A stretch of DNA of 64,000 nucleotides from Anaeramoeba ignava BMAN (GCA_028826165.1 JAPDFW010000087.1:1-64000); one strand, 5' to 3'. Shown: positions 23,381 through 48,800, counted from the stretch's first letter. A program made the numbers and translations. The notes: generated from the sequence alone by a model not told the origin.

Positions 23381-25177
23381 ATGAATGAAATTATATTTTT
23401 TTTAAGAAATCAATTTCCAAATCTTTTCAAAAATAAACCAAATGAAATAACAAAACCAATTCAATTTAAATTTGAAAATGAAAATGAAAATGAAAATGAA
23501 AATGAAAATGAAAAACAAATTAAACAAATTTCAATAGGTTATTATTCAACAATTTTCCTTTTTAAAAATGGAAAAGCAATAGAATATTTAGATGAAAACG
23601 ATTTAAATCAAAAACCTGAAAAAATCCAAATTGAAAATATTCAAAAAGTATCTGTTGGTGTTCGAAATGAAGCTATTTTAACAATAGAAGGAAATGTATT
23701 TGTTAAAGGAGAAGATATTAATCTAAATAATCCAAATGAATTTATCAATATTTCATCATTAATTGAAGATATAAATGATAGAGTAATTAAAGATATTGTT
23801 TCTGGAGCTAAAACAATTTACTTATTAACTTCAAATCAAAATGCTTATGGAATTGGTTCAAATCAATATTGCCAACTTGGTTTTGATTTTAAAACACTTC
23901 AAAAAACAAAAAAACCAATTTTAATGATGAAAAATGTTTCTAAAATATTTTCAGGAAATTCTTCAAATTTTGTTTTTCTTTTAAATTCAAATCAAGAATT
24001 ATTTGGATCAGGATATAATTTCTATGGTCAACTTGGATTAGGAGAATCAATAAAAAAAGAAACTTATATAAAAAAATTAACCAAAATACAAAATATTCCA
24101 AAAGGCAAAATAATTGATATTAAATGTGGATATTTTCATTCAATAATGTTGATTGAAGATGAAAATCAAAATCCAAAAAGAAAACTTTATTCATGTGGAA
24201 TTTATGAATATAACGGACTTGGCCAAAATGGAAGAATTGATGAATTTACTGAAATCAAATCATCTTTATTTGATGATGATAATATTCTTGAAATTTCTGT
24301 TGGACATGCACATAATTTGATTTTAACATCTACTGGGAAACTGATAGGATTTGGATGGAATCATTATGGTCAATTAGGAACTGGAAATACAAATGATCAA
24401 TTAATTCCAATTCAAATTGAACTTCCTGAATTAAGATTTAATGAAAATATTTATAATTATCATATTTCTTGTGGAGATTTTAATTCATTTCTTTATTATT
24501 CTCCTCTTTCTTTTTCTAATCTTGAAGAAGATTTGATAAAACTATTTAGAAGAAAAGAATTTTGTGATATTTCATTTAAAACCAAAAATGGAGAAATAAT
24601 TGAAGCTCATAAATTAATATTGAAATATAGATTAAAAGATGAAAATCAAAATCAAAATCAAATTGAAAAACTTCAAGAAATTATTTCAAAAAAATCAATT
24701 AAAGAATCAAATCAAATATTTGAAATGATTTATTCAAATAATTCCAAAATAAATCCAAAATTATATTCTGAAATTAAAGAAATTATAAATTTAAATGAAA
24801 AAATTGAAGAAACAATGAAAAGAATTTATTTAAATGAAAATGAAAATGAAAATGAAAAAGATTTTATTATTGAAAGAAAAGAAAAACAATATAAATTTCC
24901 TAAATTAATATTAATAATGAGAAGTGAATTATATCGAGGAATGTTTTTATCTGTAACTGAAGATAAATCCAATAAAGTTACAGATTATAGTGAATTAAGT
25001 AATAAATCATTTCAAATATTTGAATATTGGATTTATTCAAATCAAATTAAAGATGAAATTCAAATTACACAAGAAATAATTAATGAAATTGAAACAGGAA
25101 TTGATTATTTTCAATTAAATCAAACAAATCCAAATTTATTTGATTTATTAATTAACAAATTTAATAATCAAAATTAA
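23381..25177 (+). CDS. RCC1-repeat + BTB/POZ protein (intronless, 598 aa), tandem paralog
   Basis: Same architecture and near-identical C-terminus as 21262-23067. Confidence 0.88.
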   Translation: MNEIIFFLRNQFPNLFKNKPNEITKPIQFKFENENENENENENEKQIKQISIGYYSTIFLFKNGKAIEYLDENDLNQKPEKIQIENIQKVSVGVRNEAILTIEGNVFVKGEDINLNNPNEFINISSLIEDINDRVIKDIVSGAKTIYLLTSNQNAYGIGSNQYCQLGFDFKTLQKTKKPILMMKNVSKIFSGNSSNFVFLLNSNQELFGSGYNFYGQLGLGESIKKETYIKKLTKIQNIPKGKIIDIKCGYFHSIMLIEDENQNPKRKLYSCGIYEYNGLGQNGRIDEFTEIKSSLFDDDNILEISVGHAHNLILTSTGKLIGFGWNHYGQLGTGNTNDQLIPIQIELPELRFNENIYNYHISCGDFNSFLYYSPLSFSNLEEDLIKLFRRKEFCDISFKTKNGEIIEAHKLILKYRLKDENQNQNQIEKLQEIISKKSIKESNQIFEMIYSNNSKINPKLYSEIKEIINLNEKIEETMKRIYLNENENENEKDFIIERKEKQYKFPKLILIMRSELYRGMFLSVTEDKSNKVTDYSELSNKSFQIFEYWIYSNQIKDEIQITQEIINEIETGIDYFQLNQTNPNLFDLLINKFNNQN

Positions 25178-29031: not shown

Positions 29032-29119
29032 TTCTAATTTAAAATGAAAAAAAGAAAAAATGAAAAAAAAATTTTTTTTTATTTTCTTTTTTCATTTTTT
29101 TCCACAAATAAAATTAAAA

Positions 29120-32100
29120 ATGGATTTAACACAACAAGAAGCAGAAGAACAAGAATATATTAACAAAATACTTACAAATGCACTCAGCTCACAAAACCCA
29201 ATTCGAATAGAAGCAGAAAATCAAATACAAAATTTATTCGAAAATGACAAATTTGGGATTTTTTTAGCAAGAAATATTTTACTTGAAAAAGTTGAAAAAA
29301 GAATCAAATTAATTTCATTCATTCTTTTAAAACAATTCATTCAGAAAAAATGGACACAAATACCAATTGAATATAAAAAACAAATCGCATTAATTTTGAG
29401 AGAATCACTTTCATTTTCAGAATCAAGAATTCGCAGACAAATTGCGCTTGGATTAGGAGAAATAGCAAATTCAGAAGGAGGAAGTGAATGGAAAGATTTG
29501 TTTTCTTTGTTTATTGATAATATGGAGCAAATCAACCAATTACAAGTTGAAAAATTTGATGATCAAACAATTAATACTTTGGATGGAATTTTGACAGCAA
29601 TTTCCACAATGATTAATTCAGAAAACGAAGCTTTTTGCCAAAATACAGACTTATTAAACCCACTTTTTATCCACTGCTTAAATATTGTTTTGAACCAGAA
29701 CAATCGCTATTCGGTTGATTTGCAGCTCAAAAGTCTTTCTATTGTCCGAATAGCGTTAAAAGCATTGTCTGTAATTTCGTTTGTTGGAAAATCTGTTGAT
29801 CAATCAATTTCATTGTGGATTGAGTTTATTCAAGGAGTCTTTTCCGCTCAAAATGACTTCTCGTCTGAAAATTGCGGAATCAAAATTGAATGCTTAAATA
29901 TTCTTAGTGCGTTAATCAACGGATTCAAAAAGCAATGGAATTTGGATCTCAAATTAATCATGGATTATATTTGGACTTCTCTTGAATCTTCATATGAAAA
30001 TTATCAAAAATTCTGGGTATATTCATCTCAAAATGAGCCCTCAAATCAATTATCAATGAACTTCCATCCCGACAGCTACGAAGTCATGGATTTTGAAGTT
30101 CTCATTTCAGCATATTTCGAATTTGTTCACACTGTTGTTTGCTATTTATCCACTAGAGAGATTCTCAGACCCCATCTTCAGCAGATCTTCTCAATCTCAT
30201 GGAGATACGCGCAAATCACCCAAGACCAAATCAAAAAATGGTCTTCAGATTCAAACGCATTTCTTTCTGACGAAGAGGATGAACTTGTTTATAACGTCAG
30301 AAGAACTTGCAGCGATTTAATTGAGGAATCCATCTCCTATTTTGAATATGACGCTGTTCTTGCGCTCACTTCTGTGATCGAATCTTCTCTCGATTCAGTC
30401 TTCAAGGAAAAGGATTCAGGAAATGTTTTTTGGTGGAAAAATTTAGAAGCAATTCTTTATATTTTGGGTGATAATTCAAACGACTTTAAGAAATTCCAAT
30501 CAATTTTCAACTTCCAATTATTTATAGATAATATTTTGCTTCCTTTATTACCAACTGTTACAGATTTTCCCTTCTTGTTTGGCCGAATTCTCTGGTTTTG
30601 TGGATTGAATTTTTCTTTAATTTCTCAAAATTCATTACCAGCTTTTTTCGAGAATATTTTATATGGAATTCAAGAATCAAATTCAATTCCCGTCTTAATT
30701 CTATCATTTAAAACAATATCAAAGTATGCAAATCAAAACCAAAACCAAAATCAAAGTGAAAAAATTTTTATTTTTGATTTAAATTAAAATTTTTAAATTT
30801 TATTTAAAGATTATCTCCTAAAAAAAAAGGAGTCGAAACTCTTTTTCCACTTCTTCCTTCAATTTTCTCACAGCTTCTTATTCAAATTCAAAATTCAGAT
30901 GAAGACACACTTCATTTACTTTTAGAAACATTGGAATTCTTACTCAAATTCAACCAAGAAGTCACAATCAAATATTCAAATGAAATTGTGTCGATAACAT
31001 TATCTTCTTGGGAAAAATATATTGAGGATTCTTTATTAACATGTATTTGCAATGAAATTGTTTCTTCATTAATGAAATTCCCAGAAATTCAATCTCAAAT
31101 TTTGGATCAAGTTTTTAATTTAGTTCTGAAATTTTTCGTCAATTATTCGCAATTTGAATCACCAGTTATAAATTCAGCAATTGATTTACTCAACTCAGTT
31201 TTGCTCAAACTAAATGTTGAGATTGGTGGAAATGAAGATGTTTTTAAACAAATTTTCTTTTCTTTATTAAATATTATCCAAGTTCATTCTGAAAATGAAA
31301 TCACTCAAGGCGTGATAACTTCTCTGCGTATTTTCGTAAGAATTGCCGCAGATTATATTCCCCTCTGGAAAAATGAAAACAACGAATCTGCTTTGGATAG
31401 TTTGATTAATTATCTTGGTATTTTGCTTCATCCTGAAACTGACGAATCTGGATTATTGAATATTGGATCATTAATTTCCAAAATTTTCCGATCTTTTCGT
31501 TCATTTTTACAAAATTCAATGGAACAAATTCTTGAAGTGATTCTTCAGCGATTAATGGATCGCAATTTGGATTCTTTGATTCAAAACTTGATTATGGTTT
31601 TTATTCGTGAAATTCATGTTAGTAAAGAATTAATTGTGAATTTTCTTTTAGAAAGAAATCAACTTGAATTTTTTCTTGATTGTTGGACTTTTCATCATCC
31701 ACAATTTTTTGGGAATTATGAAATTAAAACAAGTCTTTTAACACTTTCAATGATGATTGATTTTTCAGTTCATGATGAAAGAATACAAAATTGTTATGTT
31801 CGAGGAATTGAAAATCAAAATCAAAATCGAAAATTTAAATGAAAATTCAAATCAAAATCAAAATGAAAATTCAAATCAAAATAATCAAAATCAAAATCAA
31901 TGGACAAAAGAACCTTTTCCAATTAAAGCAACTAGAATTTTAGTTGATTCACTTCAAAATCCTGATCTTGATAATCAAAATATCTTAAAATTTATTTATC
32001 AACCAACTAACTATAATTATGATGATAATGATAATGATAATGATATTGATGATGATATTGATGATGATATTGATGATGAATATATGAATGATGATGATGA

Positions 32101-32443
32101 TATGAATGAAAACGAAAATGATGAAAAAGCTTTTAATCAAACACTTTCCAAATTAAAAAATTTTAATGATGATGATGATGATGAAAATTTTGATGATGGT
32201 TTTAATGATTTTAATGGTTTTAATGATTTTAATGATTTTAATGATGAATCTGAATCTGATTTTGATGCTAATGAAACTTATGATTTAGATGAAAAAAATG
32301 ATCCAATTTTTAATATTGAAATTAAAAACTTTTTAAAAAATTTCTTACAAAAATTCTCACAAAATCATCAAAGAGAATTTCAAATTATAATCCAATCTTT
32401 TCCACCAAAAAAGAAACAATTTCTTCAAAATATTTTAAATTGA
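29120..32443 (+). CDS. IPO9: Importin-9 (karyopherin beta family); intron 30724-30809
   Basis: IBN_N (RIEAENQIQNL...ILLKQFIQKKW), QITQDQIKKWSSDSNAFLSDEEDE...VRRTCSDL, WWKNLEA, PFLFGRILW, acidic loop then DEKNDPIFNIEIKNFLKNFLQKF. One-base frameshift near 31828 in an NQ tract. Confidence 0.88.
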
Positions 32444-32562
32444 AAACAAAAAACAAAATTTTAAATTTCTTTTCTTTTCGATTTAATAAAATTTTTTTTC
32501 TTTTCTTTTAAATTTTTTGAACCAAAATAATAAAAATAAAAATAAAAATAAAAATTTAAGAT

Positions 32563-35500
32563 TCATTTCTTCTTTAATTCTGATGTTGTTTGAACTTCAT
32601 ATTCAACAAGAAAACGAGGAAGAATTCTTTGTTCATGAAAAATTCCAATTTCATCTCCTTCAATTGAATTTAATTCTTCTTCAGAAATAGGATAATAAGA
32701 ACGTCTTGGTCTTGCATTAAAATCACGAACTTTTTCAAAAATATCTCTTGTTTTGTTTTTGAATTTAACAAGAGTATAATGTGAATCAAAACCTTCTTCC
32801 AAACCTCTTCCAACATTAACCTTTGAAACAGGATTTGGTAAACCTAATAAAACCCAACACATAATAAGTTGGAAATTATTTTGGACATTTTCATTTTGAT
32901 TTGAAAAATTTTGATTTGAAAAATTTTGATTTGAAACATTTTGATTTGAAACATTTTGAGAAAGACTTTTTGATTTAATTTCCAAATAATATTGTCCATA
33001 TGAAGGTTCTTGAGTTAAATAAATTGCTTTTCCAAAATATCCAGGATCTGTTGTTGACAAATTAAGCAATCCTTTCTCACAAATACTGTGGATATATCGC
33101 TTGTCTGTTCCATGAAAGGCAACAATCGGATTTTCTTTTCTTCCTTTTAAAAGTCCGTCAGCATTCCACAAATGCTCCAAATATTTTGCTCCAATATGAT
33201 CATCTGGATGAGTAAATTTATAATATTCCACAAAATTAAAGTCTTTCGATAAGCTTTTCATCTTCAAATTAATTGTATTTGATAATATTTTCTGCTCCTC
33301 TGCAAATTTGCGTTCCAGTTTGGGATTAATAATAACTGAAACTCTTTTCACTTTATAAATATGTTGTTTGTCTTCTCCAACAAATCTATAGAAAGCAGCT
33401 TCCGCTTTCAAAAATAAAAATGCTGCATATGATGAATTCCCTACTGCATGCGGCTTTGAAATGTGCACAATATTTGCTACTGTTTCGCCTGTTTTTTCAT
33501 CTTTGATGTTCTCAATTCCCTCGATTAGTTCTTGACTTGAAAATAAAGAGAAATTATCAATTTTATAATAAAAATCTTCATCCTTCTTGATTCTGGAAAT
33601 AATTTCGCTAATCTGATAGAAAGAGGGTCGTTCTCGTGGATTCTCGGAAAGACATTCCATGATTAATTGTTGGATATATTGAGGGATATTTTCTGGGAAT
33701 TTCAAAACAGATAAAAGTGATGCAAATGGTTTTTGACCAGTGAAAAGTTCATAAAGAATAATCCCAAAACTGTAAACATCCGATTTTTCCCCATATTTCT
33801 TTTCCTTCAAAATCTCCGGCGCAACATATTCAAACGTGCCCATGATATTTCCTGACATTGTTGTTGATTTGTCCGATATAAACGGTCGTGATAATCCAAA
33901 ATCACAAATTTTGCAAATTAAATTTTCATCCAATAAAATGTTGCTTGGTTTCAAATCCAAATGCAGAATGTTCTGGGAATGCAAATAGCACATCCCTTGC
34001 ACAATTTCTTGCACAATTTTCAATTTGTCTTCCATTGTTAGTTTGTTCTTGTATTTTTCACTTGTGTTTTCAATATAATTTTTCAAACTTCCTCCTTCAA
34101 CAAATTCAACAACAATACAATTTTCTTGTTTTTCCGTTTTAAATGTTCCAAAAAATTTCACAATATTTTTGTGTCTAATCGTACTCAATGTTGCCACTTC
34201 TGATTCAAACATTTTTTGGTTTTCCATTTGAATTTTTTTGATTGCAACTTTTGTTGATCTGAATAAAATAATATTTTTTTTTTGTTACAAAAAATAAATG
34301 AAGAGATTAAATAAGATATTTGAATAAATATTCTCTTCTTTTTGTTATTTTTTTTTTATACCGATAAGTTCCATATTCAACTATACTATTATGTTCTTGA
34401 TCAATTAATTCAATTACATGAACTTCCTCAGGATTAATTATTCTTCTTTCAGATAAAATACTGACTCTAATAGATCTACTACTAATTGAGTTTTTATTTG
34501 CAACATCCAAATCTAACATATATTGGCCATTGAAGTTTGGTATGTATGAAACAGTATATTCTCCATTTTGATTATCGATTACTTTCAATGGCTCATTTAT
34601 ACTTGAGAAAATGGCTCTTATTTTTTCTCCTCCTGTTTTAATTAAATTTCCATATTCATCATATGCTTGAATTATAAATTCTGTCTCTTGATTTTCTATT
34701 GCTCTGAATGCTTTTTCTCCAATTATTTTCGATTTATTTATATCAATTTCACCTGGAATGATTTGGATATAACAATTTTTTTGTTTCAATCTTTTTCTTC
34801 CAATTTTAACTGTGATATGAAATTTTCCGATTTGGGTTGATGATAAAATTAAATCATAAGTACCATTATTATTATCTTTTGCAAATCCATCAATAATTTT
34901 TCGATGTTTTTTCTTTTTATTTTGATTTGAATTTTGAATTTGATTTGAATTTTGATTTGAATTTTGAATTTGATTTGAATTTTGAATTTGAATTTGATTT
35001 GAATTTTGAATTTGATTTGAATTTTGAATTTGATTTGAATTTTGAATTTGATTTTGAATTTGATTTAAATTTTGAATTTGATTTTGATTTTGATTTTGAT
35101 TTTGATTTGAATTTTCATTTAAATTTTCATTTAAATTTTCATTTTCATGATAACTCATATAAACACTAATTAAATCTAAATTTCCTCCATAAGCAATTGA
35201 TTCTTTTCTTTTTGTATATAATTTTAATGTAAATATTATATTTTCTCCTGCTTTAAACTGAAATAAATATTAAATTAAAATTAAAATTAAATAAATTTAA
35301 AATTAAATCAAATTAAATTAAATTAAATTAAATTAAATTAAAATTAAATTGAAATTAAAATTAAAATTAAAATTAAAATTAAATTAAAATTAAAATTAAA
35401 ATTAAAATTAAAATTAAAATTAAAATTAAAATTAAATTAAATTAAATTAAAATTAAAATTAAATTAAAATTAAAATTAAAATTAAAATTAAAATAAAATT

Positions 35501-38500
35501 TTCATACAGTTTTCATCTTTTCTTCACTTTCAGAAAACTCTAAGATATTGGAATAAGTTGAAGAAGGTCCAGAAATTGTTCTGAAAGTAAATATTTCTGA
35601 CCATAAACTGAAACCAACTTTATTTTGAGCTCTGATCCTGAGATTATATTCTTTTGAAGGCTTTAAATTTGTTAATAAAATTGAGTTTTGAGATGTTTGG
35701 AAATTTTCCGAATAAGAATATTGTTGAGAAGAAACCTCAATTTCATAAAAATCAATTAAAGAACCATTGAAAGAAGGTTCTTTCCATTCAATAACAGCTT
35801 GAATCGAATCAATTCGTGAACAATAAATTTGAGAAAGTGGAATTTTTTCAGGAGAAGAAATTGAAATTGTTGAAAATTCTTCCCATTCAATCCAATTTGT
35901 CCAATAAATAGAATTATAACAGCAACCACGGACTTTATATTTTGATTGGGGAAGTAAATTATTGAAGATTGCTCCTTCTTCAAATGAACAAAGTGTTTCT
36001 TGAATCGAAACATTTTGTGAGTGAGTTAGTTGTAATGCAAATTGAATTTTCCCAAGTGATTTATGAATTTGACTATAAGAATCAAGAATGTGAATGCGGT
36101 CTCCAGAAACAAGAGAAACTTTGATAACCAATGATGTTGGTCTGGAGATGCACGAGAGCTTTAGGGAAAGAACTGTGTAATCAACTATAAAAAATGGAAT
36201 AACCGAAAAAGAATTTGGAAACTCAATCAAATCGGAATCAGCTTTCTCTCCTCTTGATGAAGGATAAAGTTGCTCAGCAGAATAAATCCATGGAGAATTC
36301 TTTTTCAATAGTTTTTGACGCATTGCAATTTTCTCATTTTTACTTGTCAAAAGTGTATAATTTGAATCAAAACCAGGAATAAATTTGCCATGCTCCGCTT
36401 TCGTTTGCGGAAATGGAACCCCTATCATCCCCTTGCAGCACATCAACCTATTATTGGGTAAATCAATGCTTGTAGTTTGATTATCTTTTTTCTGTGGTTG
36501 TTGGGTTAAAATGTTTGGATTTGTTTGCATATTGGAAAGTGAATAAAACCTGCTTCCTGTACCAAGCATTTGAGAAAATAATGGTGCTGCTCGTTGAAAC
36601 CCTTGCGCACAAATCTCATGAATCTCGTTATGTGAGACAGGTCGCCAGCACAGTATCTCATGTTCGTTGTGTGTTTCCAAAAAATCTTCAGTTGATTTTC
36701 TCAAATAATCAAGATAGGATTTCCCAAGAGAGTTGGATTTGATTCGAGGAAGACTTTGATTTGTGTTTGTGCTCTGATTCATCTCACTTGGATCTTTCAT
36801 GTTTATTGGATGTTTAATTTCCTCGATTTGCGCATTTCCTGATGACAATCTACTGCAAATTTCAACATATTTTTCAAGAATATTTGTAGGTTCATTGTAT
36901 TTTTGTCTCAATAACTTTCTGTGTTTGTTATAACTCCGTTCCAAATAGCGGTTCAAGACTAAAGAGACCTTTGTTACTCGGAAAACAAGCGGGGTTGCTC
37001 CAATAAACTCAAGAAATTTGCGTTCTGCTCGAAGAAAAAATTCCGATCCCAAATCATAACTTTCAATCCCTTCAAAATGACTATCGCTTAATAAATGTGC
37101 AAATCCAAAATTAAGGCGTTGGTCGTTGATGAGATTTTTCAGGAGCTGATAATCGCCGAGTGGACGATGGATATGGACAAGCATACCAACAACTGTGTTA
37201 CTTTCATTTGCAACAATTGGGCTCACGTTTTCATTGGAAACAGAATATAAGATTTGGGAATGATTCCAGTGAAAACAGTCGTATGATAATTCCCATAGCT
37301 TTCGAAGTATCAGATCCATTGTCAGATACTCTTTTCCTTCTAAACTGTATGCATTCTCGCATTTATTAACCAAATCACTTATTTTTTCTCTTATTTTTGG
37401 ACTCATTTTTTCTTCATCTGAAAAGTCTCCAAAAAAGGATTCAGCCAATTTCCCAAAGGCATATATATCTTTTGGAATCTGGTCTATTGGTGGATTCAAG
37501 GAATTTGCAATTCCAATCATTTCCAATCCATTGGGCGGAATATTATCCCATTGTTTGTCTCCAAAAAAATTTATTCTAAACTCATTTTCAGGATTTACCC
37601 CAATCATTGTCTTGTGCAGATTTCCATGAACAATTCCCTTGCGGTGGAGATATAATAATCCTTGGGCAATCTGCACTAACGCATGTATTTTATATTCGAC
37701 ACTTTTTTTTTTCAAAAATTCAATTTCAAGTTTATTCTCAAAATTCTCAGTCACAACCCAGATTGTTGACTCATTAGAAAGATACCCAATCATTGGGATA
37801 ATGTTCGGATGAGAAATCCCAGATAAATTCGAAATGCGCCTCTTTAGTTCCATGTGGATATGCGGGAGAAGATTGGAACATTTTGTAACAATCACAATTT
37901 GATCTCCAAATTTTGCTTTCCAAGAAATCATTTTGATTGAAAAATTCTTTATGAAGAAATCACTCGATTTTTTTTCCACATCTGAATTGGATTGCTGCGG
38001 AAAAACTGTGGGATCTTCATTTTCAAAAACGGGAAATTTGGGGTCTTCTTGCTCACTTGATTGATCAATAAGATCTTCTTCTGAAAAATTTGGAATTTGA
38101 GGTAATTTTGTAATTTCGAAATTTGAATCAGCAAAAACAGGAAGAATAAAAGTTTTCCAAACTCCTTCAGAAGAAACAAAGAGAAAAAGTCTTCCAGGAG
38201 TTATTGGAGTGAAAGATATTGCAAAACTTCCGTCTTTGTTGTCAGTGATATTTGAACTAATTGTATGAAAATTTTCACATTTGATAACAACTTGCATTTT
38301 TTGACCTCCCATTTTAATCTTATTTCCATGTTCATCAAATAACTGAAGGATAACTGTGGAATTTTTGCCTGAGAGTAACGGACTTGAAGGATCTATTCCG
38401 TTTCCATGGAGAATACACTTTGAAAGACAGATTTTTCCTGAAAAAACGTGGAAAACAAAAGGCTCAGTATTTCCTGTTAAAAGATTAACAAATTTACGAG

Positions 38501-40868
38501 AATGAGATTTTTTGGATCGTGGTTGATTTGGACTTTCTCTTCTGCGAGCTTCAGCCAAACTGTACATGCAGAAAGCCCTGTATATTCCTACTGTTTTGGG
38601 TTTAAAAGTGAATGTGTAAGTTCCGTCAAGATTATCTGTGATTTCACCGTTATAAGGAGTTTCTTGCTTTTCTTGATCCTCAGAGGCTTCTTTGCACCGC
38701 AACATAAACGAGAACAGATTTGCACAACCTCCGTTATAGAGTCGCGCTCCTGTGCTGTCGAATGTTTCGATGATGAAACGCAAAGGCTCACCAGAGAAGA
38801 ATTGGGTTTTCTCAGAAATTTTTGCCAAGTCTTTGATCTGTGTTTTGGAGAAATCGGGCAGTCTGAAAGTGTGGACCTCACTCCATTCACTGTATCCTAT
38901 TGAGTTTCTTGAGCGGACGGATATGTAGTATGTTGTTGATTTTGGGGAAACATTCTTGATTCTAATTTGGCATTCTTTTGAGAAAAAAATATTTGGATCA
39001 TAAGGTTCAATTTTGATTTCATATTCTATCACTGATGTTAGAGGATTGGAGGGTTTTGGGGAAGGTGTTTGCATAAGATTTGTTTCTCGCATGCTTTGTG
39101 TATGCATGTTAGAAAGCGTCTGCACAGATCTTAGTTTGGGTGTTCCTTTTTGTTGTGAGACTGAAGATGAGCGGAAAAGTGAATTGAAGAATCCGGACTT
39201 ATTTGATTGGGCTTGTTTGAGAGGTGCGGACTCCCAGCTCACAGAGATCTCATGTTTATTGATCGCGTTGAGGATGATTTGAGGGATTTTTTTTGGAGGA
39301 AATGCGCCCTTTGATGCGTTTCTGAGGAGCTTGATTGCACCTGTTTTTTTGGCTTTTTTTGCAACACTAAGTGGAGTTGCTCCCATTATTTTCTTCTTTT
39401 TCGCCTTTGGGTTGGCGTTGTGGAGAAGAAGAAGCGAGACAATTTCGATGTTCCCTATTTCTGCAGCGATATGCAAAGGAGTCGTGTCGTTTTCCTTTAT
39501 GTCAACAACAACACCCATTCTCAATAGAAATCTTAATCCATCTACATTTGATTTGTTCACACACTCCCAAAGCAAGCTTCTTGGATCGTATTGTGTTTGT
39601 AGTCTTTCTGCTATTTTTTGCATTTCGGGGCACTTCTTCATCTCAATCTCAAGCGATGTTGAAATTCGTATTTGTTTTTGAAGATATTTCGAAATTTTGT
39701 CGAAACTCCATCTTTTCAGTGGATCATTTTCCCAGCAAACCTGGATAAGAACAAGTAAGTTTTTACTGATAAGATTTGTGTAATTTTTCGGATCAAAAGG
39801 AGGCTTGAATTTTTCATGGACAATCTTATTGAAAAGGTTATTTGTCATTGCACCAAACTCACTGAAAGGAATTCGACGAGTCAAGACATAATATGCAAGA
39901 AATCCGAAGCTGTAGATATCGTTTGTGGGGGATTTGCTCCCAGAAATAAATGCCTCAGGAGCATCCACAATGGCATCCAAAAAATTTGAATTTTCCCGAA
40001 AAGCGGTTTGAATTGAGGACAAATTTTCGCTTAGATTCTGAATTTGAGAAGATTTCTGCAAAACATTCATCATATTACTTTTGGCTTCTGCGAAAATCAA
40101 TGGAATCACTTTCACACTCAAGTGAGAATCGATTAAAACATGATCTGCACTGAGTTTGTGATGTTGTAAACCAATCTTATAAAGAAATTCCATTCCTTGA
40201 GAAATTTGCAGAAGAATCAAAAGAACATTTCGTTCTGTTAATTTTTCAGGGAATTTGGATACGAAATGGCTCAGCGAAATGGAGTCTGGAAAATACTCGA
40301 CAATCAAAGAAAGAGGCGACTTGGTGAATCCGTAAAATCGAAGCACATTTGGATGTGAATAACTAGATGTAAGAAGCGTAATTTCATGAAGAGACAATCG
40401 ATCCAAACCGCTTTGTGTTTTTAAAGTGTGAATGGCGATCCTCTTTGAGTTGTAAACCCCTTCGAAAACAGAAAGATTTGGCGACTCAAAAAGTTGTTTT
40501 CCAAACTGAATTTTTTCTGATTGAATTTCAAAAGGAACAATCACATGATTCCAAAACGAATTGATTTGCGAATTTTCCACAAATTTATTGTACTCAGTAA
40601 TGACCTGATTCAACTCAGAAATTATCTCAGGAATAACTGTTTCTTGGGTGATTGTGTAAATTTCATTTTGGAAAGATTGAATAAATTGACAACTCATAAA
40701 AATATAATAAAGAATTCCTTTATTTTTTGATAAAACAAATGATTTTCTTAATTCATGGATTTTATGTGATTTACTATTTAGTTCTTCTTTTTCTGAGAGT
40801 TTTTTTATTGTTAAGATGATTTCTGAAATTAAATTTTTATCTGATTCTGTTGATATTGTAAATGACAT
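32563..40868 (-). CDS. Giant ~2650-aa protein: 2 pseudokinases + 1 TKL-type kinase, ankyrin, 3 FN3, 4 filamin-type Ig repeats, 2 PARP-type ADP-ribosyltransferase domains; exons 40868-35508, 35257-34362, 34258-32563
   Basis: Introns GTATGA(35507)...CAG(35258), phase 0, and GTATAA(34361)...CAG(34259), phase 2, join three ORFs in frame; spliced CDS is 7953 nt. Kinase motifs VAIK/HLDLKPSN/DFG/APE. PARP motifs FHGT/YFGKAIYL/DEIGIF...ILPRFLVEY. Confidence 0.85.
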
Positions 40869-40880
40869 TTTAAAAAGCAA

Positions 40881-41020: not shown

Positions 41021-42640
41021 TTAAAAAAATTTGTGTATAATTCCGGAAATAAATCGGATAAATTGAGTATAAACTGGAATCAAAACATCATTTTTCAAAG
41101 TAATAAAAATTCCTAAAAAGGAGATCCAAATTTTGTGAAAAGTTTTGAGAACAGGAGAAATAATTTTATCAATCAAAACGTATTTCACTAATTTAACAAT
41201 TGAAATGATTTTTTTGATGAAAAGTTTAAAAACAAACAAAGTTGGATTCCAAACACGATTTTTAACAAAAATTGCGAATCCTTTGATAGCTTTCCAAACA
41301 GGATAAACGACGTGAAAATAGACAGTTTTTGGAATGTAAAGAAGGATGAACGAAGAGAATCTTTTTGAGCGGAAAAATATTTTGCTTGCGAAAATGGAAA
41401 AAATTTTAAACGAAATTAAAATGATATTGTTATGCACAAATTTGGGGATTTTGACAACAAAAATTTTTGAGTATCGCTTGGAAAAAGAAAGAACTGGCCG
41501 AAGAAAACGGCGATAAAAAAACTTGGGGATTTTGATAAAAAGGAACTTCAGATAGAACTTGATCTGGAACTTGTATTTTCGATAGACTTTTCTGTAGAAA
41601 AAAGAAGGTATTTTGACAAAAATAAACAGAAAAGCAATTTTTGACTTGCGATAAACAGGAAGGATAAGTTTTCTGTAGACAAACAAGGGGAACTTTACGA
41701 AAAGAGCGTTTTTGATGATTCGGAGAAGGCGTATTCTGGGGTTTACAATTGCGTCGTAAATGAGGAACGGGAGTTTAAACACGAAAAATCTGAAAATTTT
41801 CCGAACTCTTTTGATTGTATAAATTATGAATTGTTTGTAAATAAACTTGGGAATTTTCAACATGAAAAAACGGTAAATTAGGGAAAGTAACGGAACAATA
41901 TAACGGACTAATAAACGATATAATTTGACTGGAATTTCCACAAATAAATATTTGAAAAATTTCCGAATTCGTTTGAAAGAGTCGCTCAGCCATTTGTCAT
42001 ACATTTGAAGAGGGAAATCCCAGAGGATGAAGATGACCCATTCGTAGACGAAATTTGCAGAAGGAATGATAATCCGTCGCCAACAAAAAACAGGTAATTT
42101 GACAGACAAAAATTTGACTGTTCTGACCAAGTTGTAAACAATAGGATCAACAAAAGTACGATAAATGTATTTCGGAAAGTATAATATGATATATTTGAAA
42201 AGCAATATCAGAACTTTTCGGATTCTTCCGCCGAAAAGAAAGTTGATTTTTGAGTAGATTTTCATGGCAATTGCGACAATAGGCAAAATTAACTTGGATT
42301 TGATAAAAGAATATAAATTGAAAATTTTTTCTAAAATTCTATCTAAATTGCGAGAAAAAAAGCCCACAATTGACCAGAAACCATAGATAATGATGTTCTT
42401 GATAAAGATGAAAAGCTTAATTATGACTTTTTTGATCAGAAATTTGAGAATTTTTGGGGAATAATAAATCAAAATGACTGGTGAAAAAATAATTGCAATT
42501 AAAACAAAAAATATCTTTTTAAATATGTTCATATTATTCCAATCAAATTGTTTTTGTGAAATGATGTTTTTGATTTCATTTGAATTGTTTGTTTTTTCTG
42601 AACTACGTGTTCTTAATTTAGAATCATTTAATTCATTCAT
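41021..42640 (-). CDS. Unknown basic/hydrophobic protein with about 10 tandem 27-aa amphipathic repeats
   Basis: 539-aa intronless ORF with ATG in typical A-rich context and non-repetitive DNA; N-terminal hydrophobic segment IFFVLIAIIFSPVILIYY. Confidence 0.75.
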   Translation of the reverse strand: MNELNDSKLRTRSSEKTNNSNEIKNIISQKQFDWNNMNIFKKIFFVLIAIIFSPVILIYYSPKILKFLIKKVIIKLFIFIKNIIIYGFWSIVGFFSRNLDRILEKIFNLYSFIKSKLILPIVAIAMKIYSKINFLFGGRIRKVLILLFKYIILYFPKYIYRTFVDPIVYNLVRTVKFLSVKLPVFCWRRIIIPSANFVYEWVIFILWDFPLQMYDKWLSDSFKRIRKFFKYLFVEIPVKLYRLLVRYIVPLLSLIYRFFMLKIPKFIYKQFIIYTIKRVRKIFRFFVFKLPFLIYDAIVNPRIRLLRIIKNALFVKFPLFVYRKLILPVYRKSKIAFLFIFVKIPSFFYRKVYRKYKFQIKFYLKFLFIKIPKFFYRRFLRPVLSFSKRYSKIFVVKIPKFVHNNIILISFKIFSIFASKIFFRSKRFSSFILLYIPKTVYFHVVYPVWKAIKGFAIFVKNRVWNPTLFVFKLFIKKIISIVKLVKYVLIDKIISPVLKTFHKIWISFLGIFITLKNDVLIPVYTQFIRFISGIIHKFF

Positions 42641-45800: not shown

Positions 45801-48800
45801 ATTTAATTTTAAATTTGATTTTAATTTTAATTTAATTTTGATTTAATTTTGATTTAATTTTGATTTAATTTTAATTTAATTTTGATTTAATTTGATTTAA
45901 TTTTAATTTAATTTTAATTTTAATTTAATTTTGATTTAATTTTAATTTTGATTTAATTTTGATTTAATTTTTGATTTAATTTTGATTTTAATTTTAATTT
46001 AATTTTGATTTTAATTTTGATTTAATTTTGATTTAATTTTGATTTAATTTTGATTTAATTTTGATTTAATTTTAATTTAATTTTGATTTAATTTTGATTT
46101 AATTTTGATTTAATTTTGATTTAATTTTGATTTAATTTTGATTTAATTTTGATTTAATTTTGATTTAATTTTGATTTAATTTTGATTTAATTTTGATTTA
46201 ATTTTGATTTAATTTTGATTTAATTTTGATTTAATTTTAAATTTTGATTTAAATTTTGATTTAATTTAATTTTGATTTAATTTTAATTTAATTTTGATTT
46301 AAATTTTAATTTTAATTTTAATTTTGATTTAATTTTGATTTAATTTTGATTTAATTTTGATTTAATTTTTGATTTAATTTTTGATTTAATTTTGATTTAA
46401 ATTTTGATTTAATTTTGATTTAATTTTGATTTAATTTTGATTTAATTTTGATTTAATTTTGATTTAATTTTGATTTAATTTTTGATTTAATTTTGAGTTT
46501 AATTTGATTTAATTTGATTTAATTTTGATTTAATTTAATTTTGATTTAATTTTGATTTAATTTTTGATTTAATTTTGAGTTTAATTTTTGATTTAATTTT
46601 GATTTAATTTTGATTTAATTTTGATTTAAATTTTGATTTAAATTTTGATTTAATTTTGATTTAATTTTGATTTAATTTTGATTTAATTTTGATTTAAATT
46701 TGATTTAATTTTGATTTAATTTTGATTTAATTTTGATTTAAATTTGATTTAATTTTGATTTAATTTTGATTTAATTTTGATTTAATTTTGATTTAATTTT
46801 GATTTAATTTTGATTTAAATTTTGATTTAATTTTAATTTAATTTTGATTTAATTTAATTTTGATTTAATTTTTGATTTAATTTTTAATTTAATTTTGATT
46901 TAAATTTGATTTAATTTTAATTTTTAATTTTGATTTAATTTTGATTTAATTTTGATTTAATTTTAATTTAATTTTGATTTAATTTTGATTTAATTTTAAT
47001 TTAATTTTAATTTGATTTAATTTTGATTTTAATTTAATTTAATTTTGATTTAATTTTTGATTTAATTTTGATTTAATTTTTGATTTAATTTTGATTTAAT
47101 TTTGATTTAATTTTTTGATTTAATTTTAATTTAATTTTGATTTAATTTTAGTTTAATTTTGATTTAATTTTGATTTAATTTTGAGTTTAATTTTGATTTA
47201 ATTTTGATTTAAATTTTGATTTAATTTTGATTTAATTTTGATTTAATTTTGATTTAATTTTGATTTAATTTTGATTTAATTTTGATTTAATTTTGATTTA
47301 ATTTACAATTTAATTTTGATTTAATTTTGATTTAATTTTGATTTAATTTTTGATTTAATTTTTGATTTAATTTTTGATTTAATTTTTGATTTAATTTTGA
47401 TTTAATTTGATTTTTTGATTTAATTTTGATTTAAATTTTGATTTAATTTTGATTTAATTTTGATTTAATTTTGATTTAATTTTGATTTAAATTTTGATTT
47501 AATTTTGATTTAATTTTGATTTAATTTTTGATTTAATTTTGATTTAATTTTGATTTAATTTTGATTTAATTTTGATTTAATTTTGATTTAATTTTGATTT
47601 AATTTTGATTTAATTTTGATTTAATTTTTGATTTAATTTTTGATTTAAATTTTGATTTAATTTTGATTTAATTTTTGATTTAAATTTGATTTAATTTTTA
47701 ATTTAATTTAATTTAATTTTTGATTTAATTTTAATTTAATTTTGATTTTTAATTTTGATTTAAATTTTGATTTAATTTTGATTTAATTTTGATTTAATTT
47801 TGATTTAATTTTTGATTTAATTTTGATTTAAATTTGATTTTTTGATTTAATTTTGATTTAATTTTGATTTAATTTTGATTTAATTTTGATTTAATTTTTG
47901 ATTTAATTTTGATTAAATTTGATTTAATTTTGATTTCAAAAATTTGATTTAATTTTTTTAATTTTAATTTTAATTTCAATTTTTGATTTAATTTTGATTT
48001 AATTTTGATTTAAATTTTGATTTAATTTTTGAATTTAAATTTGATTTAATTTTGATTTAAATTTTGATTTAATTTTGATTTAAATTTTGATTTAATTTTG
48101 ATTTAATTTTGATTTTAATTTTGATTTAATTTTGATTTAAATTTAATCAATTTTTGATTTAATTTTGATTTAAAATTTGATTTAATTTTTGACAATTTAA
48201 TTTTTAATTTTAATTTTGATTTAAATTTTGATTTAATTTTGAATTTTTGATTTAATTTTTGATTTAATTTTGATTTAATTTTTGATTTAAATTTAATTTA
48301 ATTTAATTTGATTTAATTTTGATTTAATTTTGATTTAATTTTGATTTAAATTTTAATTTAATTTTAATTTAAATTTGACCAAATTTGATTTTAATTTTTG
48401 ATTTAATTTTGATTTCAATTTTTGATTTAATTTTGATTTTAATTTTGATTTAATTTTAATTTAAAATTTTGATTTAATTTTGAATTTTAATTTCAATTTT
48501 GATTTCAATTTTGATTTAATTTTTGATTTAAATTTAAAATTCAAATTTAATTTTGATTTAATTTTGATTTAATTTTGATTTAATTTTTGATTTAAATTTT
48601 GATTTAATTTTGAATTAAATTTTGATTTAATTTTGAATTTAATTTTGATTTTAATTTTGGAATTTAAATTTTAATTTAATTTTAATTTAAATTTGATTTA
48701 ATTTTAAATTTTAAATTTTGATTTAATTTTTTAATTTAATTTTTTGAATTTTTAATTTTGATTTAATTTAATTTTTGATTAAATTTTGATTTAATTTTGA

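What the first reader, a model, noticed from the sequence alone, without database searches (positions are those of the whole stretch)
32563..40868. Giant triple-kinase / double-PARP signalling protein hidden across three ORFs
Seen: two canonical introns join ORFs 35502-40880, 34307-35158 and 32563-34227 into one 2650-aa frame. Approximate order: helical N-terminus, pseudokinase (40520-39650), ankyrin (TPLHIAAEIGNIEIVSLLL), FN3, filamin x2 (ITDNLDGTYTFTFKP; ITDNKDGSFAISFTP), pseudokinase (37930-37290), degenerate ART (37250-36170), FN3 x2, filamin x2 (KDNNNGTYDL; IDNQNGEYTVSYIP), kinase, ART. Established: H-Y-E is the catalytic triad of PARP1/tankyrase-type ADP-ribosyltransferases, and the C-terminal domain keeps all three (FHGT, GKAIYL, GDEIGIF). 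Inference: a single-chain phosphorylation plus ADP-ribosylation switch, with pseudoenzyme domains as sensors or decoys, conceptually like plant tandem kinase-pseudokinase immune proteins. I know no characterised protein with this architecture.
Basis: partly seen in the sequence, partly recalled or inferred. Interest (0 to 1): 0.85.

Follow-up and report, generated by a model that had tools for sequence, protein, structure and literature searches.

The report
Giant spliced kinase–PARP signalling protein
The three ORFs are one expressed, spliced gene for a 2650-residue protist protein carrying a conserved kinase plus PARP-type ADP-ribosyltransferase pair behind a dead duplicate of the same pair; I found no described protein with this domain combination, and its function is untested.

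Summary
On the minus strand, exons 40868-35508, 35257-34362 and 34258-32563 give one 2650-codon frame. Contigs of a public cDNA-like run skip exactly 35258-35507 and 34259-34361 (GT..AG). A paralogue on another contig has introns at the same places and phases.

Domain order, by Pfam, profile and fold evidence:
- helical N-terminus, pseudokinase 1, ankyrin
- FN3, filamin x2, pseudokinase 2, dead ART (H to R, E to L)
- FN3, filamin x2, TKL-type kinase, PARP-fold ART with H-Y-E intact

The roughly 1000-residue module [FN3-filamin2-kinase-ART] is duplicated inside the gene: a dead copy, then a live copy. The two paralogues are 25-35% identical over the front parts but 74% (kinase) and 65% (ART) at the C-terminus.

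The kinase-then-ART cassette recurs. It is found in a TPR protein of the same genome, in an Anaeramoeba flamelloides transcript, and in several metagenomic proteins. I found no paper describing such a fusion.

Function is inferred only. The kinase also lacks every glycine of its glycine-rich loop. First-stage readers of this scan had noted other kinase-plus-PARP-like tandems elsewhere in this genome; those notes are unchecked.

Verdict: a real new domain architecture built from known families, of moderate interest.

The parts
35508..40868 (-). Exon 1 (1787 codons, ATG at 40868-40866, ends in phase 0)
   Evidence: Open frame. The N-terminal Met is shared with the paralogue (M-S/N-F-T/L-I). Only 35508-35700 of this exon was laid, on a 5411-nt cDNA-like contig. 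That contig's length extrapolates to about 40861; this is an inference, not a laid alignment.
40509..40868 (-). N-terminal region of about 120 residues, predicted helical, unclassified
   Evidence: No Pfam hit. No Atlas hit. The AF2 model shows four helices but its pLDDT is only 47.7, so it is unusable. Apart from the gene itself, only the C56 paralogue matches it in this genome.
39684..40502 (-). Pseudokinase 1 (exon 1 residues 123-395)
   Evidence: Pfam PK_Tyr_Ser-Thr, E 8e-34. Alignment: the beta3 Lys is His, HRD reads HHK, and no DFG is present.
39321..39566 (-). Ankyrin repeats (residues 435-516, about 2-3 repeats)
   Evidence: Pfam Ank_2 E 2e-8 and Ank E 3e-8.
38865..39107 (-). FN3 domain a (residues 588-668)
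   Evidence: Pfam fn3, E 8e-6, 26.4 bits against a cut-off of 25.
38166..38807 (-). Filamin repeats 1 and 2 (residues 688-769 and 814-901)
   Evidence: Pfam Filamin E 2e-7 and E 1e-16.
37194..37943 (-). Pseudokinase 2 (residues about 976-1225)
   Evidence: Pfam, E 9e-11. Alignment: HRD reads HGN and DFG reads FFG. It is collinear with the C-terminal kinase-ART (E 4e-21).
36165..37103 (-). Dead ART-like domain (residues about 1256-1568)
   Evidence: No Pfam hit. It matches the ART-family profile A1 (E 3e-16 and 6e-13; 2e-29). The triad His is Arg and the Glu is Leu; the Tyr is kept.
35583..35822 (-). FN3 domain c (residues 1683-1762). A weaker FN3-like stretch lies before it, at about 35829-36101.
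   Evidence: Pfam fn3, E 5e-17. The preceding stretch gets no significant Pfam hit.
35258..35507 (-). Intron 1 (250 nt, GT..AG, 2.4% GC, a (TAATTT)n-like microsatellite)
   Evidence: Sequence. GC content. Absent from the cDNA-like contig (table 8). The paralogue has an intron at the same position and phase.
34362..35257 (-). Exon 2 (298 codons plus 2 nt). It holds filamin-like repeat 3, which carries an in-frame N/Q repeat insert, filamin repeat 4 (34493-34747), and the start of the N-lobe of kinase 3.
   Evidence: Pfam Filamin, E 2e-11. Residues 1-252 align to the paralogue's filamin 1-2 (E 3e-11). The open frame runs through the repeat.
34259..34361 (-). Intron 2 (103 nt, GT..AG, phase 2), inside the kinase N-lobe just before the VAIK strand
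   Evidence: The cDNA-like contig skips exactly these 103 nt (table 5). The paralogue has the same position and phase (TAT CG|GT). The A. flamelloides transcript protein runs straight across this point.
32563..34258 (-). Exon 3 (1 nt plus 564 codons plus TGA)
   Evidence: Open frame. 33900-34258 was laid on a 2330-nt contig. That contig's length extrapolates to about 32530; this is an inference.
33592..34450 (-). Kinase 3, TKL-like, catalytic residues intact; interrupted by intron 2
   Evidence: Pfam, E 7e-55. Best solved relatives are JAK, CTR1, PTK6, B-Raf and TAK1. The VAIK Lys, the alphaC Glu, HLD..N, DFG and APE are all present. The glycine-rich loop has no glycine.
32578..33453 (-). PARP-type ART domain with H-Y-E. 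His codon 33112-33114, Tyr 33019-33021, Glu 32650-32652; these are H2468, Y2499 and E2622 of the spliced model.
   Evidence: Pfam PARP, E 3e-10. AF2 pLDDT 87, pTM 0.84. Every one of the 50 listed Foldseek PDB hits is a PARP-family or pseudo-PARP domain, E 7e-10 to 2.5e-8. Nine of ten Atlas rows carry Pfam PARP and the tenth is a plant RST family. The triad is at least 90% conserved across 46 relatives.

Best explanation
SHOWN. 32563-40868 (minus strand) is one expressed, three-exon gene of a very AT-rich protist. The organism is probably an Anaeramoeba species, judged only from the best outside hit. The product has 2650 residues and no hydrophobic segment long enough to span a membrane, so it is most likely cytosolic.

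It is built from a helical N-terminus, pseudokinase 1 and ankyrin, followed by two copies of a module [FN3 - filamin x2 - kinase - PARP-type ART].
- The first copy has lost the kinase catalytic Asp and DFG, and the ART His and Glu.
- The second copy keeps every kinase catalytic residue except the glycines of the glycine-rich loop, and keeps the full H-Y-E triad of the ART.

INFERRED. The C-terminal kinase and ART are the catalytic output, and they work as a coupled pair. Support for coupling: the same kinase-then-ART order recurs behind quite different N-terminal regions in this genome and elsewhere.

The fast-diverging front two thirds set where and when the output fires. That front comprises pseudokinase 1, ankyrin, the Ig-like rods and the dead copy of the module.

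My preferred version is cis-regulation of the live module by its dead duplicate, as the JH2 pseudokinase regulates JH1 in JAKs. The filamin/FN3 rods would act as spacers or dimerisation elements.

I put the gene model and architecture at about 0.95. I put the regulatory mechanism at about 0.3. The substrates, and whether the ART makes mono- or poly-ADP-ribose, cannot be told from sequence.
For: Gene model:
- Frame arithmetic and GT..AG sites fit.
- cDNA-like contigs skip exactly both introns.
- The C56 paralogue has introns at the same positions and phases, with unrelated intron sequence.
- The A. flamelloides transcript protein P0024 is continuous across the exon 2/3 junction.
- Exon GC is 0.22-0.35 against 0.02-0.14 in the introns.

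Domains: Pfam.

ART fold: the AF2 model has pLDDT 87, and every one of the 50 listed Foldseek PDB hits is a PARP-family or pseudo-PARP domain. Nine of ten Atlas rows carry Pfam PARP.

Catalytic residues: kinase alignment; ART triad.

Internal duplication:
- The middle pseudokinase-ART is collinear with the C-terminal kinase-ART over about 600 residues (E 4e-21 and 1e-22).
- The FN3-filamin parts cross-match as well.

Output versus regulatory split, from identity between the two paralogues:
- kinase 3: 74%; ART: 65%
- N-terminus, pseudokinases and filamin 1-2: 31-34%; dead ART: 25%

Cassette recurrence:
- C62 TPR-...-kinase-PARP, 1565 aa, H-Y-E intact.
- P0024, P0148, P0149, P0239 and P0257, and a kinase ORF directly upstream of P0144.

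No membrane segment: the highest 19-residue Kyte-Doolittle mean is 1.74, and it lies in an ART strand.
Against: - No single contig spans the whole mRNA. The two cDNA-like contigs are separated within the N/Q repeat of exon 2 (34903-35200).
- Run X1 is not on record as RNA.
- Kinase 3 has no glycine in its glycine-rich loop. This is conserved in the paralogue and in P0024, so ATP binding may be atypical or lost.
- P0024 has Trp in place of the triad Tyr.
- The predicted kinase 3-ART complex did not reach the mark, which gives no verdict.
- No enzymatic, localisation or interaction data exist.
- No full-length orthologue was found outside this genome.
Confidence: 0.55

Rival explanations
1. Immune or conflict sensor. 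The pseudokinases and the dead ART would be decoys or baits for factors from symbionts, viruses or parasites. Engaging them would release the live kinase-ART as an effector, in the manner of plant tandem-kinase proteins or integrated-decoy receptors.
For: - Relatives of this ART domain occur fused to NACHT (3 of 46 relatives), TPR, Roc-COR, Macro (4) and WWE. These partners are typical of immune and conflict proteins.
- The front of the protein diverges fast while the output is conserved.
- Anaeramoeba species live with intracellular or symbiosome bacteria (PMC11550330; 10.64898/2026.04.11.717937).
- A kinase-PARP protein (P0239) sits in a metagenome-assembled genome among short overlapping ORFs. 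That is possibly a prokaryote or a virus.
Against: - There are only two paralogues of this architecture in the genome. Receptor families are usually expanded or clustered.
- The neighbours are housekeeping-type genes: importin-9-like and RCC1-BTB.
- No death, TIR or STAND domain is present in this protein.
- Nothing ties it to an invader.
Confidence: 0.2
2. Cytoskeleton-associated regulator. The filamin and FN3 rods and the ankyrin repeats would tether the protein to cortical or actin structures of the amoeba. The kinase and ART would then modify cytoskeletal proteins or small GTPases locally.
For: - There are four filamin-type and two to three FN3 repeats.
- By general knowledge, filamin repeats in amoebae form dimerising rods in actin cross-linkers.
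- The protein is probably cytosolic.
Against: - No calponin-homology or other actin-binding domain was detected.
- The kinase-ART cassette also occurs behind TPR and ankyrin regions with no filamin. The rods are therefore not needed for its function.
Confidence: 0.1
3. Catalytically silent scaffold. Despite the retained motifs, neither C-terminal domain would turn over substrate. The whole protein would be a pseudoenzyme platform.
For: - Kinase 3 lacks all glycines of the GxGxxG loop.
- The ART is only 11-16% identical to solved PARPs, and a sequence-only search of the PDB finds none.
- P0024 has W at the triad Tyr.
Against: - The beta3 Lys, alphaC Glu, catalytic Asp and Asn, DFG and APE are all kept.
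- H, Y and E are each at least 90% conserved across 46 relatives.
- These two domains are the best-conserved parts between the paralogues (74% and 65%). The truly dead copy upstream shows what relaxed catalytic constraint looks like here.
Confidence: 0.1
4. More than one product. A short filamin-kinase-ART protein of about 770-860 aa, and a separate N-terminal protein, would be the real products. The long form would be rare or absent.
For: - The A. flamelloides transcript ORF P0024 (769 aa, labelled complete) starts just where exon 2 starts.
- The two cDNA-like contigs do not overlap.
Against: - One contig joins exon 1 to exon 2 and the other joins exon 2 to exon 3. Both use the predicted splice sites, and their depths are similar (48.8 and 55.3).
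- The gap coincides with a low-complexity repeat that breaks assemblies.
- Exon 1 ends without a stop codon once it is spliced.
- P0024's first Met aligns to an internal Met of exon 1, as expected for a 5'-truncated contig.
Confidence: 0.05

Closest known systems
PARP-family ADP-ribosyltransferases (Pfam PF00644), for example tankyrase, PARP3/4 and PARP10/12/14
   Same: - The C-terminal domain has the PARP ART fold. TM-score normalised to the target is about 0.7 against tankyrase catalytic domains.
- It carries the H-Y-E triad found in PARP1-4 and the tankyrases.
- Its N-terminal strand-helix unit resembles that of the mono-ART clade.
   Different: - Identity to solved PARPs is only 11-16%.
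- No WGR, PARP regulatory (helical), SAM, macro or WWE domain was detected.
- It has family-specific helical insertions and an N/Q insert.
- It is fused directly downstream of a protein kinase, and a dead copy of itself sits in the same chain.
JAK-type pseudokinase-kinase tandems (JH2-JH1), and GCN2 (pseudokinase, kinase, HisRS-like pseudoenzyme)
   Same: - A dead duplicate of the catalytic domain lies N-terminal to the live one in a single polypeptide.
- JAK kinase domains are among the best solved-structure matches of kinase 3.
   Different: - Here the duplicated unit is about 1000 residues and includes Ig-like repeats and an ART.
- No FERM/SH2 or RWD/HisRS parts are present.
- Regulation in cis is my inference and is not shown.
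Plant tandem kinase proteins (Rpg1, WTK/Yr15, Sr60/Sr62 class)
   Same: A kinase plus pseudokinase in one protein. The decoy idea is conceptually applicable.
   Different: - No orthology was shown.
- Plant tandem kinase proteins lack ART, filamin and FN3 domains.
- No link to an NLR partner or to a pathogen is known here.
Filamin / gelation factor rod proteins of amoebae
   Same: Filamin/ABP280 Ig-like repeats are present (Pfam PF00630).
   Different: - There is no actin-binding calponin-homology domain.
- Only four repeats are present, arranged as two pairs, each in front of a kinase.
Other kinase-then-ART proteins found here: C62 TPR-kinase-PARP in the same genome, A. flamelloides P0024, and metagenomic P0148, P0149, P0239, P0257 and the P0144 contig
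   Same: - The domain order is the same.
- The ART subfamily is the same.
- H-Y-E is kept, except for Y to W in P0024.
   Different: - The N-terminal regions differ (TPR, ankyrin, or none).
- None of them shows the internal dead duplicate.
- None has been characterised.

Membership tests
PARP catalytic domain family (PF00644), C-terminal domain | Profile match above the curated threshold | tested here: met
   40.3 bits against a cut-off of 26.7, E 3e-10.
PARP catalytic domain family (PF00644), C-terminal domain | ART (PARP-type) fold | tested here: met
   The AF2 model has pLDDT 87 and pTM 0.84. Every one of the 50 listed Foldseek PDB hits is a PARP-family or pseudo-PARP domain, probability 1.00. 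Nine of ten Atlas rows carry Pfam PARP.
PARP catalytic domain family (PF00644), C-terminal domain | H-Y-E NAD+-binding and catalytic triad | tested here: met
   The motifs FHGT, AIYLT and GDEIG align to the family's conserved H, Y and E.
PARP catalytic domain family (PF00644), C-terminal domain | NAD+-dependent ADP-ribosyl transfer | not testable with these tools
   This needs an enzyme assay.
PARP catalytic domain family, middle domain (36165-37103) | Homology to the ART family | tested here: met
   Pfam gives no hit. The family profile A1 gives E 3e-16 and 2e-29, collinear over profile positions 34-278.
PARP catalytic domain family, middle domain (36165-37103) | H-Y-E triad | tested here: not met
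   The His is Arg and the Glu is Leu; the Tyr is kept. The paralogue's copy has Lys and Leu at these two positions. It is therefore a pseudo-ART.
Active eukaryotic protein kinase (TKL-like), kinase 3 | Beta3 Lys, alphaC Glu, HxD..N catalytic loop, DFG, APE | tested here: met
   Alignment with active TKL kinases. Pfam E 7e-55.
Active eukaryotic protein kinase (TKL-like), kinase 3 | Glycine-rich GxGxxG loop | tested here: not met
   The aligned segment in the exon 2 tail reads Q-E-H-N-S-I-V and contains no Gly. The same holds in the paralogue and in P0024.
Pseudokinases (kinases 1 and 2) | Kinase fold match with loss of catalytic residues | tested here: met
   Pfam E 8e-34 and 9e-11. Kinase 1 has His for the beta3 Lys, HHK for HRD, and no DFG. 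Kinase 2 has HGN for HRD and FFG for DFG.
Tankyrase | Long ankyrin repeat clusters followed by SAM and then PARP | tested here: not met
   Only about 2-3 ankyrin repeats are present, and they lie some 1900 residues upstream of the live ART. No SAM domain was found.
Filamin | N-terminal calponin-homology actin-binding domain plus a rod of filamin repeats | tested here: not met
   Filamin repeats are present but no CH domain was detected.
Plant tandem kinase immune proteins | Orthology or shared descent, and a role in pathogen recognition | not tested
   No phylogeny was made. The top kinase hits include plant kinases at only 30-38% identity over the kinase domain. A role in recognition cannot be tested here.

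The most novel reading that the evidence does not exclude
The kinase-then-(H-Y-E) ART pair would be a conserved, mobile dual-modification output cassette of protist proteins, and possibly of symbiont or viral ones. Different sensor fronts (Ig-like rods, TPR, ankyrin) would plug into it. Phosphorylation and ADP-ribosylation would be mechanistically coupled in it: one domain primes or gates the other. In this gene the cassette would have been duplicated so that a dead copy regulates the live one. That would be a previously unrecognised signalling or innate-immune logic.
Probability: 0.2. Interest if true: 0.75.

Novelty: new variant of a known kind. Interest (0 to 1): 0.55.

Why it matters
Crosstalk between phosphorylation and ADP-ribosylation is normally studied between separate enzymes. 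Here nature has fused a kinase and a PARP-type transferase. It keeps them in the same order behind different front ends, and it has placed a dead copy of both in the same chain.

If the pair is active, the C-terminal fragment of about 600 residues is a compact, expressible system. It would allow a direct test of how the two modifications gate each other, and of how pseudoenzyme duplicates regulate their live twins.

It also adds a new architecture to the PARP family from a barely explored eukaryotic lineage.

Tried and rejected
Joined protein. All searches and folds were done exon by exon, by reference. As a result, kinase 3 was always analysed without its first roughly 30 residues, or with the exon 2 tail shown separately.

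Searches that found nothing useful:
- The search for homologous proteins with exon 1 gave only ankyrin-driven hits.
- The same search restricted to residues 1000-1787 gave nothing. No full-length orthologue of 983-3127 aa was seen.
- A sequence-only PDB search with the ART domain gave no significant hit.

RNA runs. The look-up of sequencing runs listed no run on record as RNA. The single holder, X1, nevertheless proved to be cDNA-like when laid.

N-terminal 120-140 residues:
- Pfam gave no hit.
- The protein Atlas gave no usable hit.
- AF2 with a two-sequence alignment gave pLDDT 47.7, too poor for a fold search.
- An MLKL-like bundle therefore could be neither supported nor excluded.

Complex prediction of kinase 3 (exon 3 part) with the ART scored 0.25, below the mark of 0.34. 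That is no verdict, and counts neither for nor against.

Literature. No described kinase-PARP fusion was found. The papers read were Citarelli 2010 (PMC2964712), Aravind 2012 (PMC3417536), the fungal PARP preprint, the Stentor kinome preprint, and the Anaeramoeba genome and symbiont papers. This is not exhaustive.

Rejected readings:
- Tankyrase-like: too few ankyrin repeats and no SAM domain.
- Filamin-like actin cross-linker: no CH domain.
- Membrane receptor: no hydrophobic span.

Organism. The identity could not be pinned down. Anaeramoeba is inferred from one best hit at 51% identity. A. pumila (25.8 Mb) does not fit the 42.8-Mb assembly.

Full report
**Setting.** The window is extremely AT-rich: 8-38% GC in 2-kb bins. 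It belongs to a 42.8-Mb, 147-contig protist assembly. Long open frames under the standard code, GT..AG introns and N/Q repeats fit a eukaryote using standard stop codons. The best outside relative of the C-terminal exon is a transcript-derived protein of Anaeramoeba flamelloides (EukProt) at 51% identity over 98% of the query. The genome is therefore probably another Anaeramoeba species. This is an inference from one hit. A. pumila, at 25.8 Mb, does not fit.

**Gene model.**
- In the sequence, exon 1 runs from the ATG at 40868 to 35508. It is followed by GTATGA...TTTCAG (intron 1, 35507-35258, phase 0).
- Exon 2 runs 35257-34362 and is followed by GTATAA...TTCAG (intron 2, 34361-34259, phase 2).
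- Exon 3 runs 34258-32563 and ends in TGA.
- The lengths sum to 7953 nt, which is 2650 codons plus the stop. No exon piece contains an internal stop.
- Exon GC is 0.35, 0.22 and 0.30. The introns are 0.02 and 0.14.

Everything below was done exon by exon, by reference.

**Transcript evidence.** No run on record as RNA holds the locus. The one holder, X1, has 196,335 Logan contigs totalling 39.5 Mb and no recorded library type. It behaves as cDNA.
- A 2330-nt contig lies on 33900-34258 and continues at 34362-34902. The reported joint skips 103 nt with ends CT..AC on the + strand.
- A 5411-nt contig lies on 35700-35508 and continues, without a break in the record, at 35257-35201.
- Both predicted introns are therefore absent, at exactly the predicted bases.
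- By extrapolating contig lengths, the long contig would start near 40861 and the short one would end near 32530. That would cover the CDS, but it is an inference.
- The two contigs are separated only within 34903-35200. This is the in-frame N/Q repeat of exon 2, which the tool skipped as repeat.
- The depths are alike (48.8 and 55.3).
- One mRNA is the economical reading, but no single record proves it.

**Independent support from a paralogue.** G000:C56, at about 526,970-535,030 (minus strand), encodes the same architecture.
- Its intron 1 (GTAAAT...ATCAG, phase 0) sits at the same point, in front of the filamin repeat.
- Its intron 2 interrupts the same codon (TAT CG|GT...AG|T), while the intron sequences are unrelated.
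- The A. flamelloides protein P0024 reads straight across the exon 2/3 junction.

**Domains.** Pfam gives the following for exon 1:
- kinase at residues 123-395 (E 8e-34)
- Ank at 435-516
- fn3 at 588-668
- Filamin at 688-769 and 814-901
- a second kinase from about residue 992 (E 9e-11)
- fn3 at 1683-1762 (E 5e-17)

Exon 2 has Filamin at 171-255. Exon 3 has a kinase at 2-218 (E 7e-55) whose profile match starts at position 29, so the N-lobe begins in exon 2. Exon 3 also has PARP PF00644 at 374-554 (E 3e-10, above the gathering score).

- The FN3-like stretch at residues about 1590-1680 has no significant Pfam hit.
- The first filamin of exon 2 has none either. It is supported only by its alignment to the paralogue's filamin pair (E 3e-11).

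No hydrophobic span is present.

**The C-terminal ART.** Sequence alone finds no solved PARP. An exhaustive phmmer search found 180 relatives, 28 of them at E 1e-10 or better.
- A 24-sequence alignment shows conserved HG[TA], G-K-G-I-Y and D-E-[IV]-V-V-F motifs.
- In 46 longer relatives, H, Y and E are each at least 90% conserved.
- The AF2 model built on that alignment is confident (pLDDT 87, pTM 0.84).
- Every one of the 50 listed Foldseek PDB hits is a PARP-family or pseudo-PARP domain. They include PARP3, PARP1, tankyrase, PARP4, PARP10, PARP12, ZAP and the TASOR pseudo-PARP, at E 7e-10 to 2.5e-8. TM-score normalised to the target is about 0.7 for tankyrase.
- Nine of ten ESM-Atlas rows carry Pfam PARP. 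The tenth is a plant RST family.
- The window's residues are H2468, Y2499 and E2622 in the numbering of the spliced model.

**The middle ART and the internal duplication.**
- The stretch 36165-37103 has no Pfam hit.
- It matches the family profile at E 3e-16 and 6e-13 in a six-frame search of the genome. A direct hmmsearch gives 2e-29, collinear over profile positions 34-278.
- At the triad it has Arg for His and Leu for Glu. The paralogue's copy has Lys and Leu.
- The whole middle pseudokinase-ART aligns end to end with the C-terminal kinase-ART (E 4e-21, and 1e-22 against the paralogue).
- The FN3-filamin parts in front of each also cross-match.
- The gene therefore contains two copies of [FN3-filamin2-kinase-ART], a dead one followed by a live one. 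The death of the first copy predates the split of the two paralogues.

**Kinases.**
- Kinase 1 has His for the beta3 Lys, HHK for HRD, and no DFG.
- Kinase 2 has HGN for HRD and FFG for DFG.
- Kinase 3 keeps the VAIK Lys, the alphaC Glu, HLD...N, DFG and APE. Its best solved relatives are TKL/TK kinases.
- The segment of kinase 3 aligned to GxGxxG has no glycine. This is conserved in the paralogue and in P0024, so its ATP-binding mode is uncertain.

**Conservation pattern.** Between the two paralogues:

| Part | Identity |
|---|---|
| Kinase 3 | 74% |
| ART | 65% |
| Filamin 4 | 58% |
| Ankyrin | 46% |
| N-terminus, pseudokinases 1 and 2, filamin 1-2 | 31-34% |
| Dead ART | 25% |

The catalytic pair is thus the constrained part.

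**The cassette elsewhere.** Kinase followed by this ART subfamily recurs:
- A 1565-aa single-ORF protein on contig C62 with TPR at the front and H-Y-E intact.
- A. flamelloides P0024.
- Metagenomic P0148, P0149 and P0257, which are truncated at the kinase.
- A kinase ORF directly upstream of the PARP-ankyrin ORF P0144.
- P0239 (831 aa) in a metagenome-assembled genome of unknown kind.

Other relatives of the ART carry NACHT, TPR, Roc-COR, Macro, WWE or PBZ domains.

**What it most likely does.**
- Shown: this is a large, probably cytosolic multidomain protein. Its only catalytically equipped parts are the C-terminal kinase and the ART.
- Inferred: these two act as a coupled output, and the diverging front two thirds, including the dead duplicate, regulate or target them.
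- I favour cis-regulation by the dead module, on the JAK JH2-JH1 analogy. The Ig-like rods would serve as spacers or dimerisers.
- The immune-decoy reading, a cytoskeletal role, a fully silent scaffold, and separate short products remain as rivals.
- A test of kinase 3-ART docking gave no verdict.
- The N-terminal helical region could not be classified.

**Novelty.** Every domain belongs to a known family. The combination was not found in the literature I could search, nor as a full-length relative. What is new is the kinase fused to a PARP-type ART, and the tandem dead and live copies on Ig-like rods. I file it as a new variant of known kinds.

Noticed in passing
window 34410: The cDNA-like contig reads C where the genome has T on the + strand. 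On the mRNA strand this is A to G, changing Glu to Gly in the exon 2 tail. The paralogue encodes Gly at this position. It could be a strain difference, an assembly error or RNA editing.
   Followed up: partly
window 35258-35507, 34920-35130 and about 32895-32975: Intron 1 is almost pure (TAATTT)n-like microsatellite at 2.4% GC. Exon 2 carries an in-frame N/Q hexanucleotide repeat inside a filamin repeat. The ART carries an N/Q insert that models as disordered (pLDDT below 50).
   Followed up: partly
G000:C62:136534-141231 (L008:35-4732): A single 1565-aa ORF with TPR at the front, then a kinase (residues 1091-1268) followed by PARP (1346-1557, E 5e-17) with H-Y-E intact. This is a third kinase-then-ART gene in this genome, with a different front end.
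   Followed up: partly
G000:C78:56,000-87,200: About ten ART-profile hits lie in tandem on one strand. This is probably the CCCH-PARP array that other first-stage notes mention.
   Followed up: no
L006/L007 (ENA ERZ27237415; NCBI GCA_027431535.1): An 831-aa kinase-PARP protein (P0239) lies on 40%-GC contigs among short ORFs without Pfam hits. The start of its gene overlaps the ORF before it, a layout that looks prokaryotic or viral. The organism was not identified.
   Followed up: no
G000:C56:533,000-535,030 (L004/L005): The paralogue's N-terminal third is split over three ORFs, with a frame change near L004+L005 position 10270 and a break near 9000-9200. These could be extra introns or frameshifts. 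I did not resolve whether the paralogue is intact.
   Followed up: partly
window 41021-42640 (-): A 539-aa ORF lies 150 nt upstream on the same strand and has no Pfam hit. The paralogue's locus has no ORF of 100 aa or more upstream on the same strand, so this is a separate gene. Another first-stage note flags its 27-residue repeats.
   Followed up: no
window 46001-52000: About 6 kb at roughly 8% GC with a GC skew of +0.83 to +0.96 and a strongly negative AT skew. It looks like a strand-asymmetric low-complexity tract.
   Followed up: no
window 29060-32443 (+) and 23381-25177 (+): The neighbours are ordinary. One is an importin-9-like gene; the two ORFs after it, which have no Pfam hit, may be further exons of it, and it converges on the 3' end of the finding. 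The other is an RCC1-BTB protein.
   Followed up: partly
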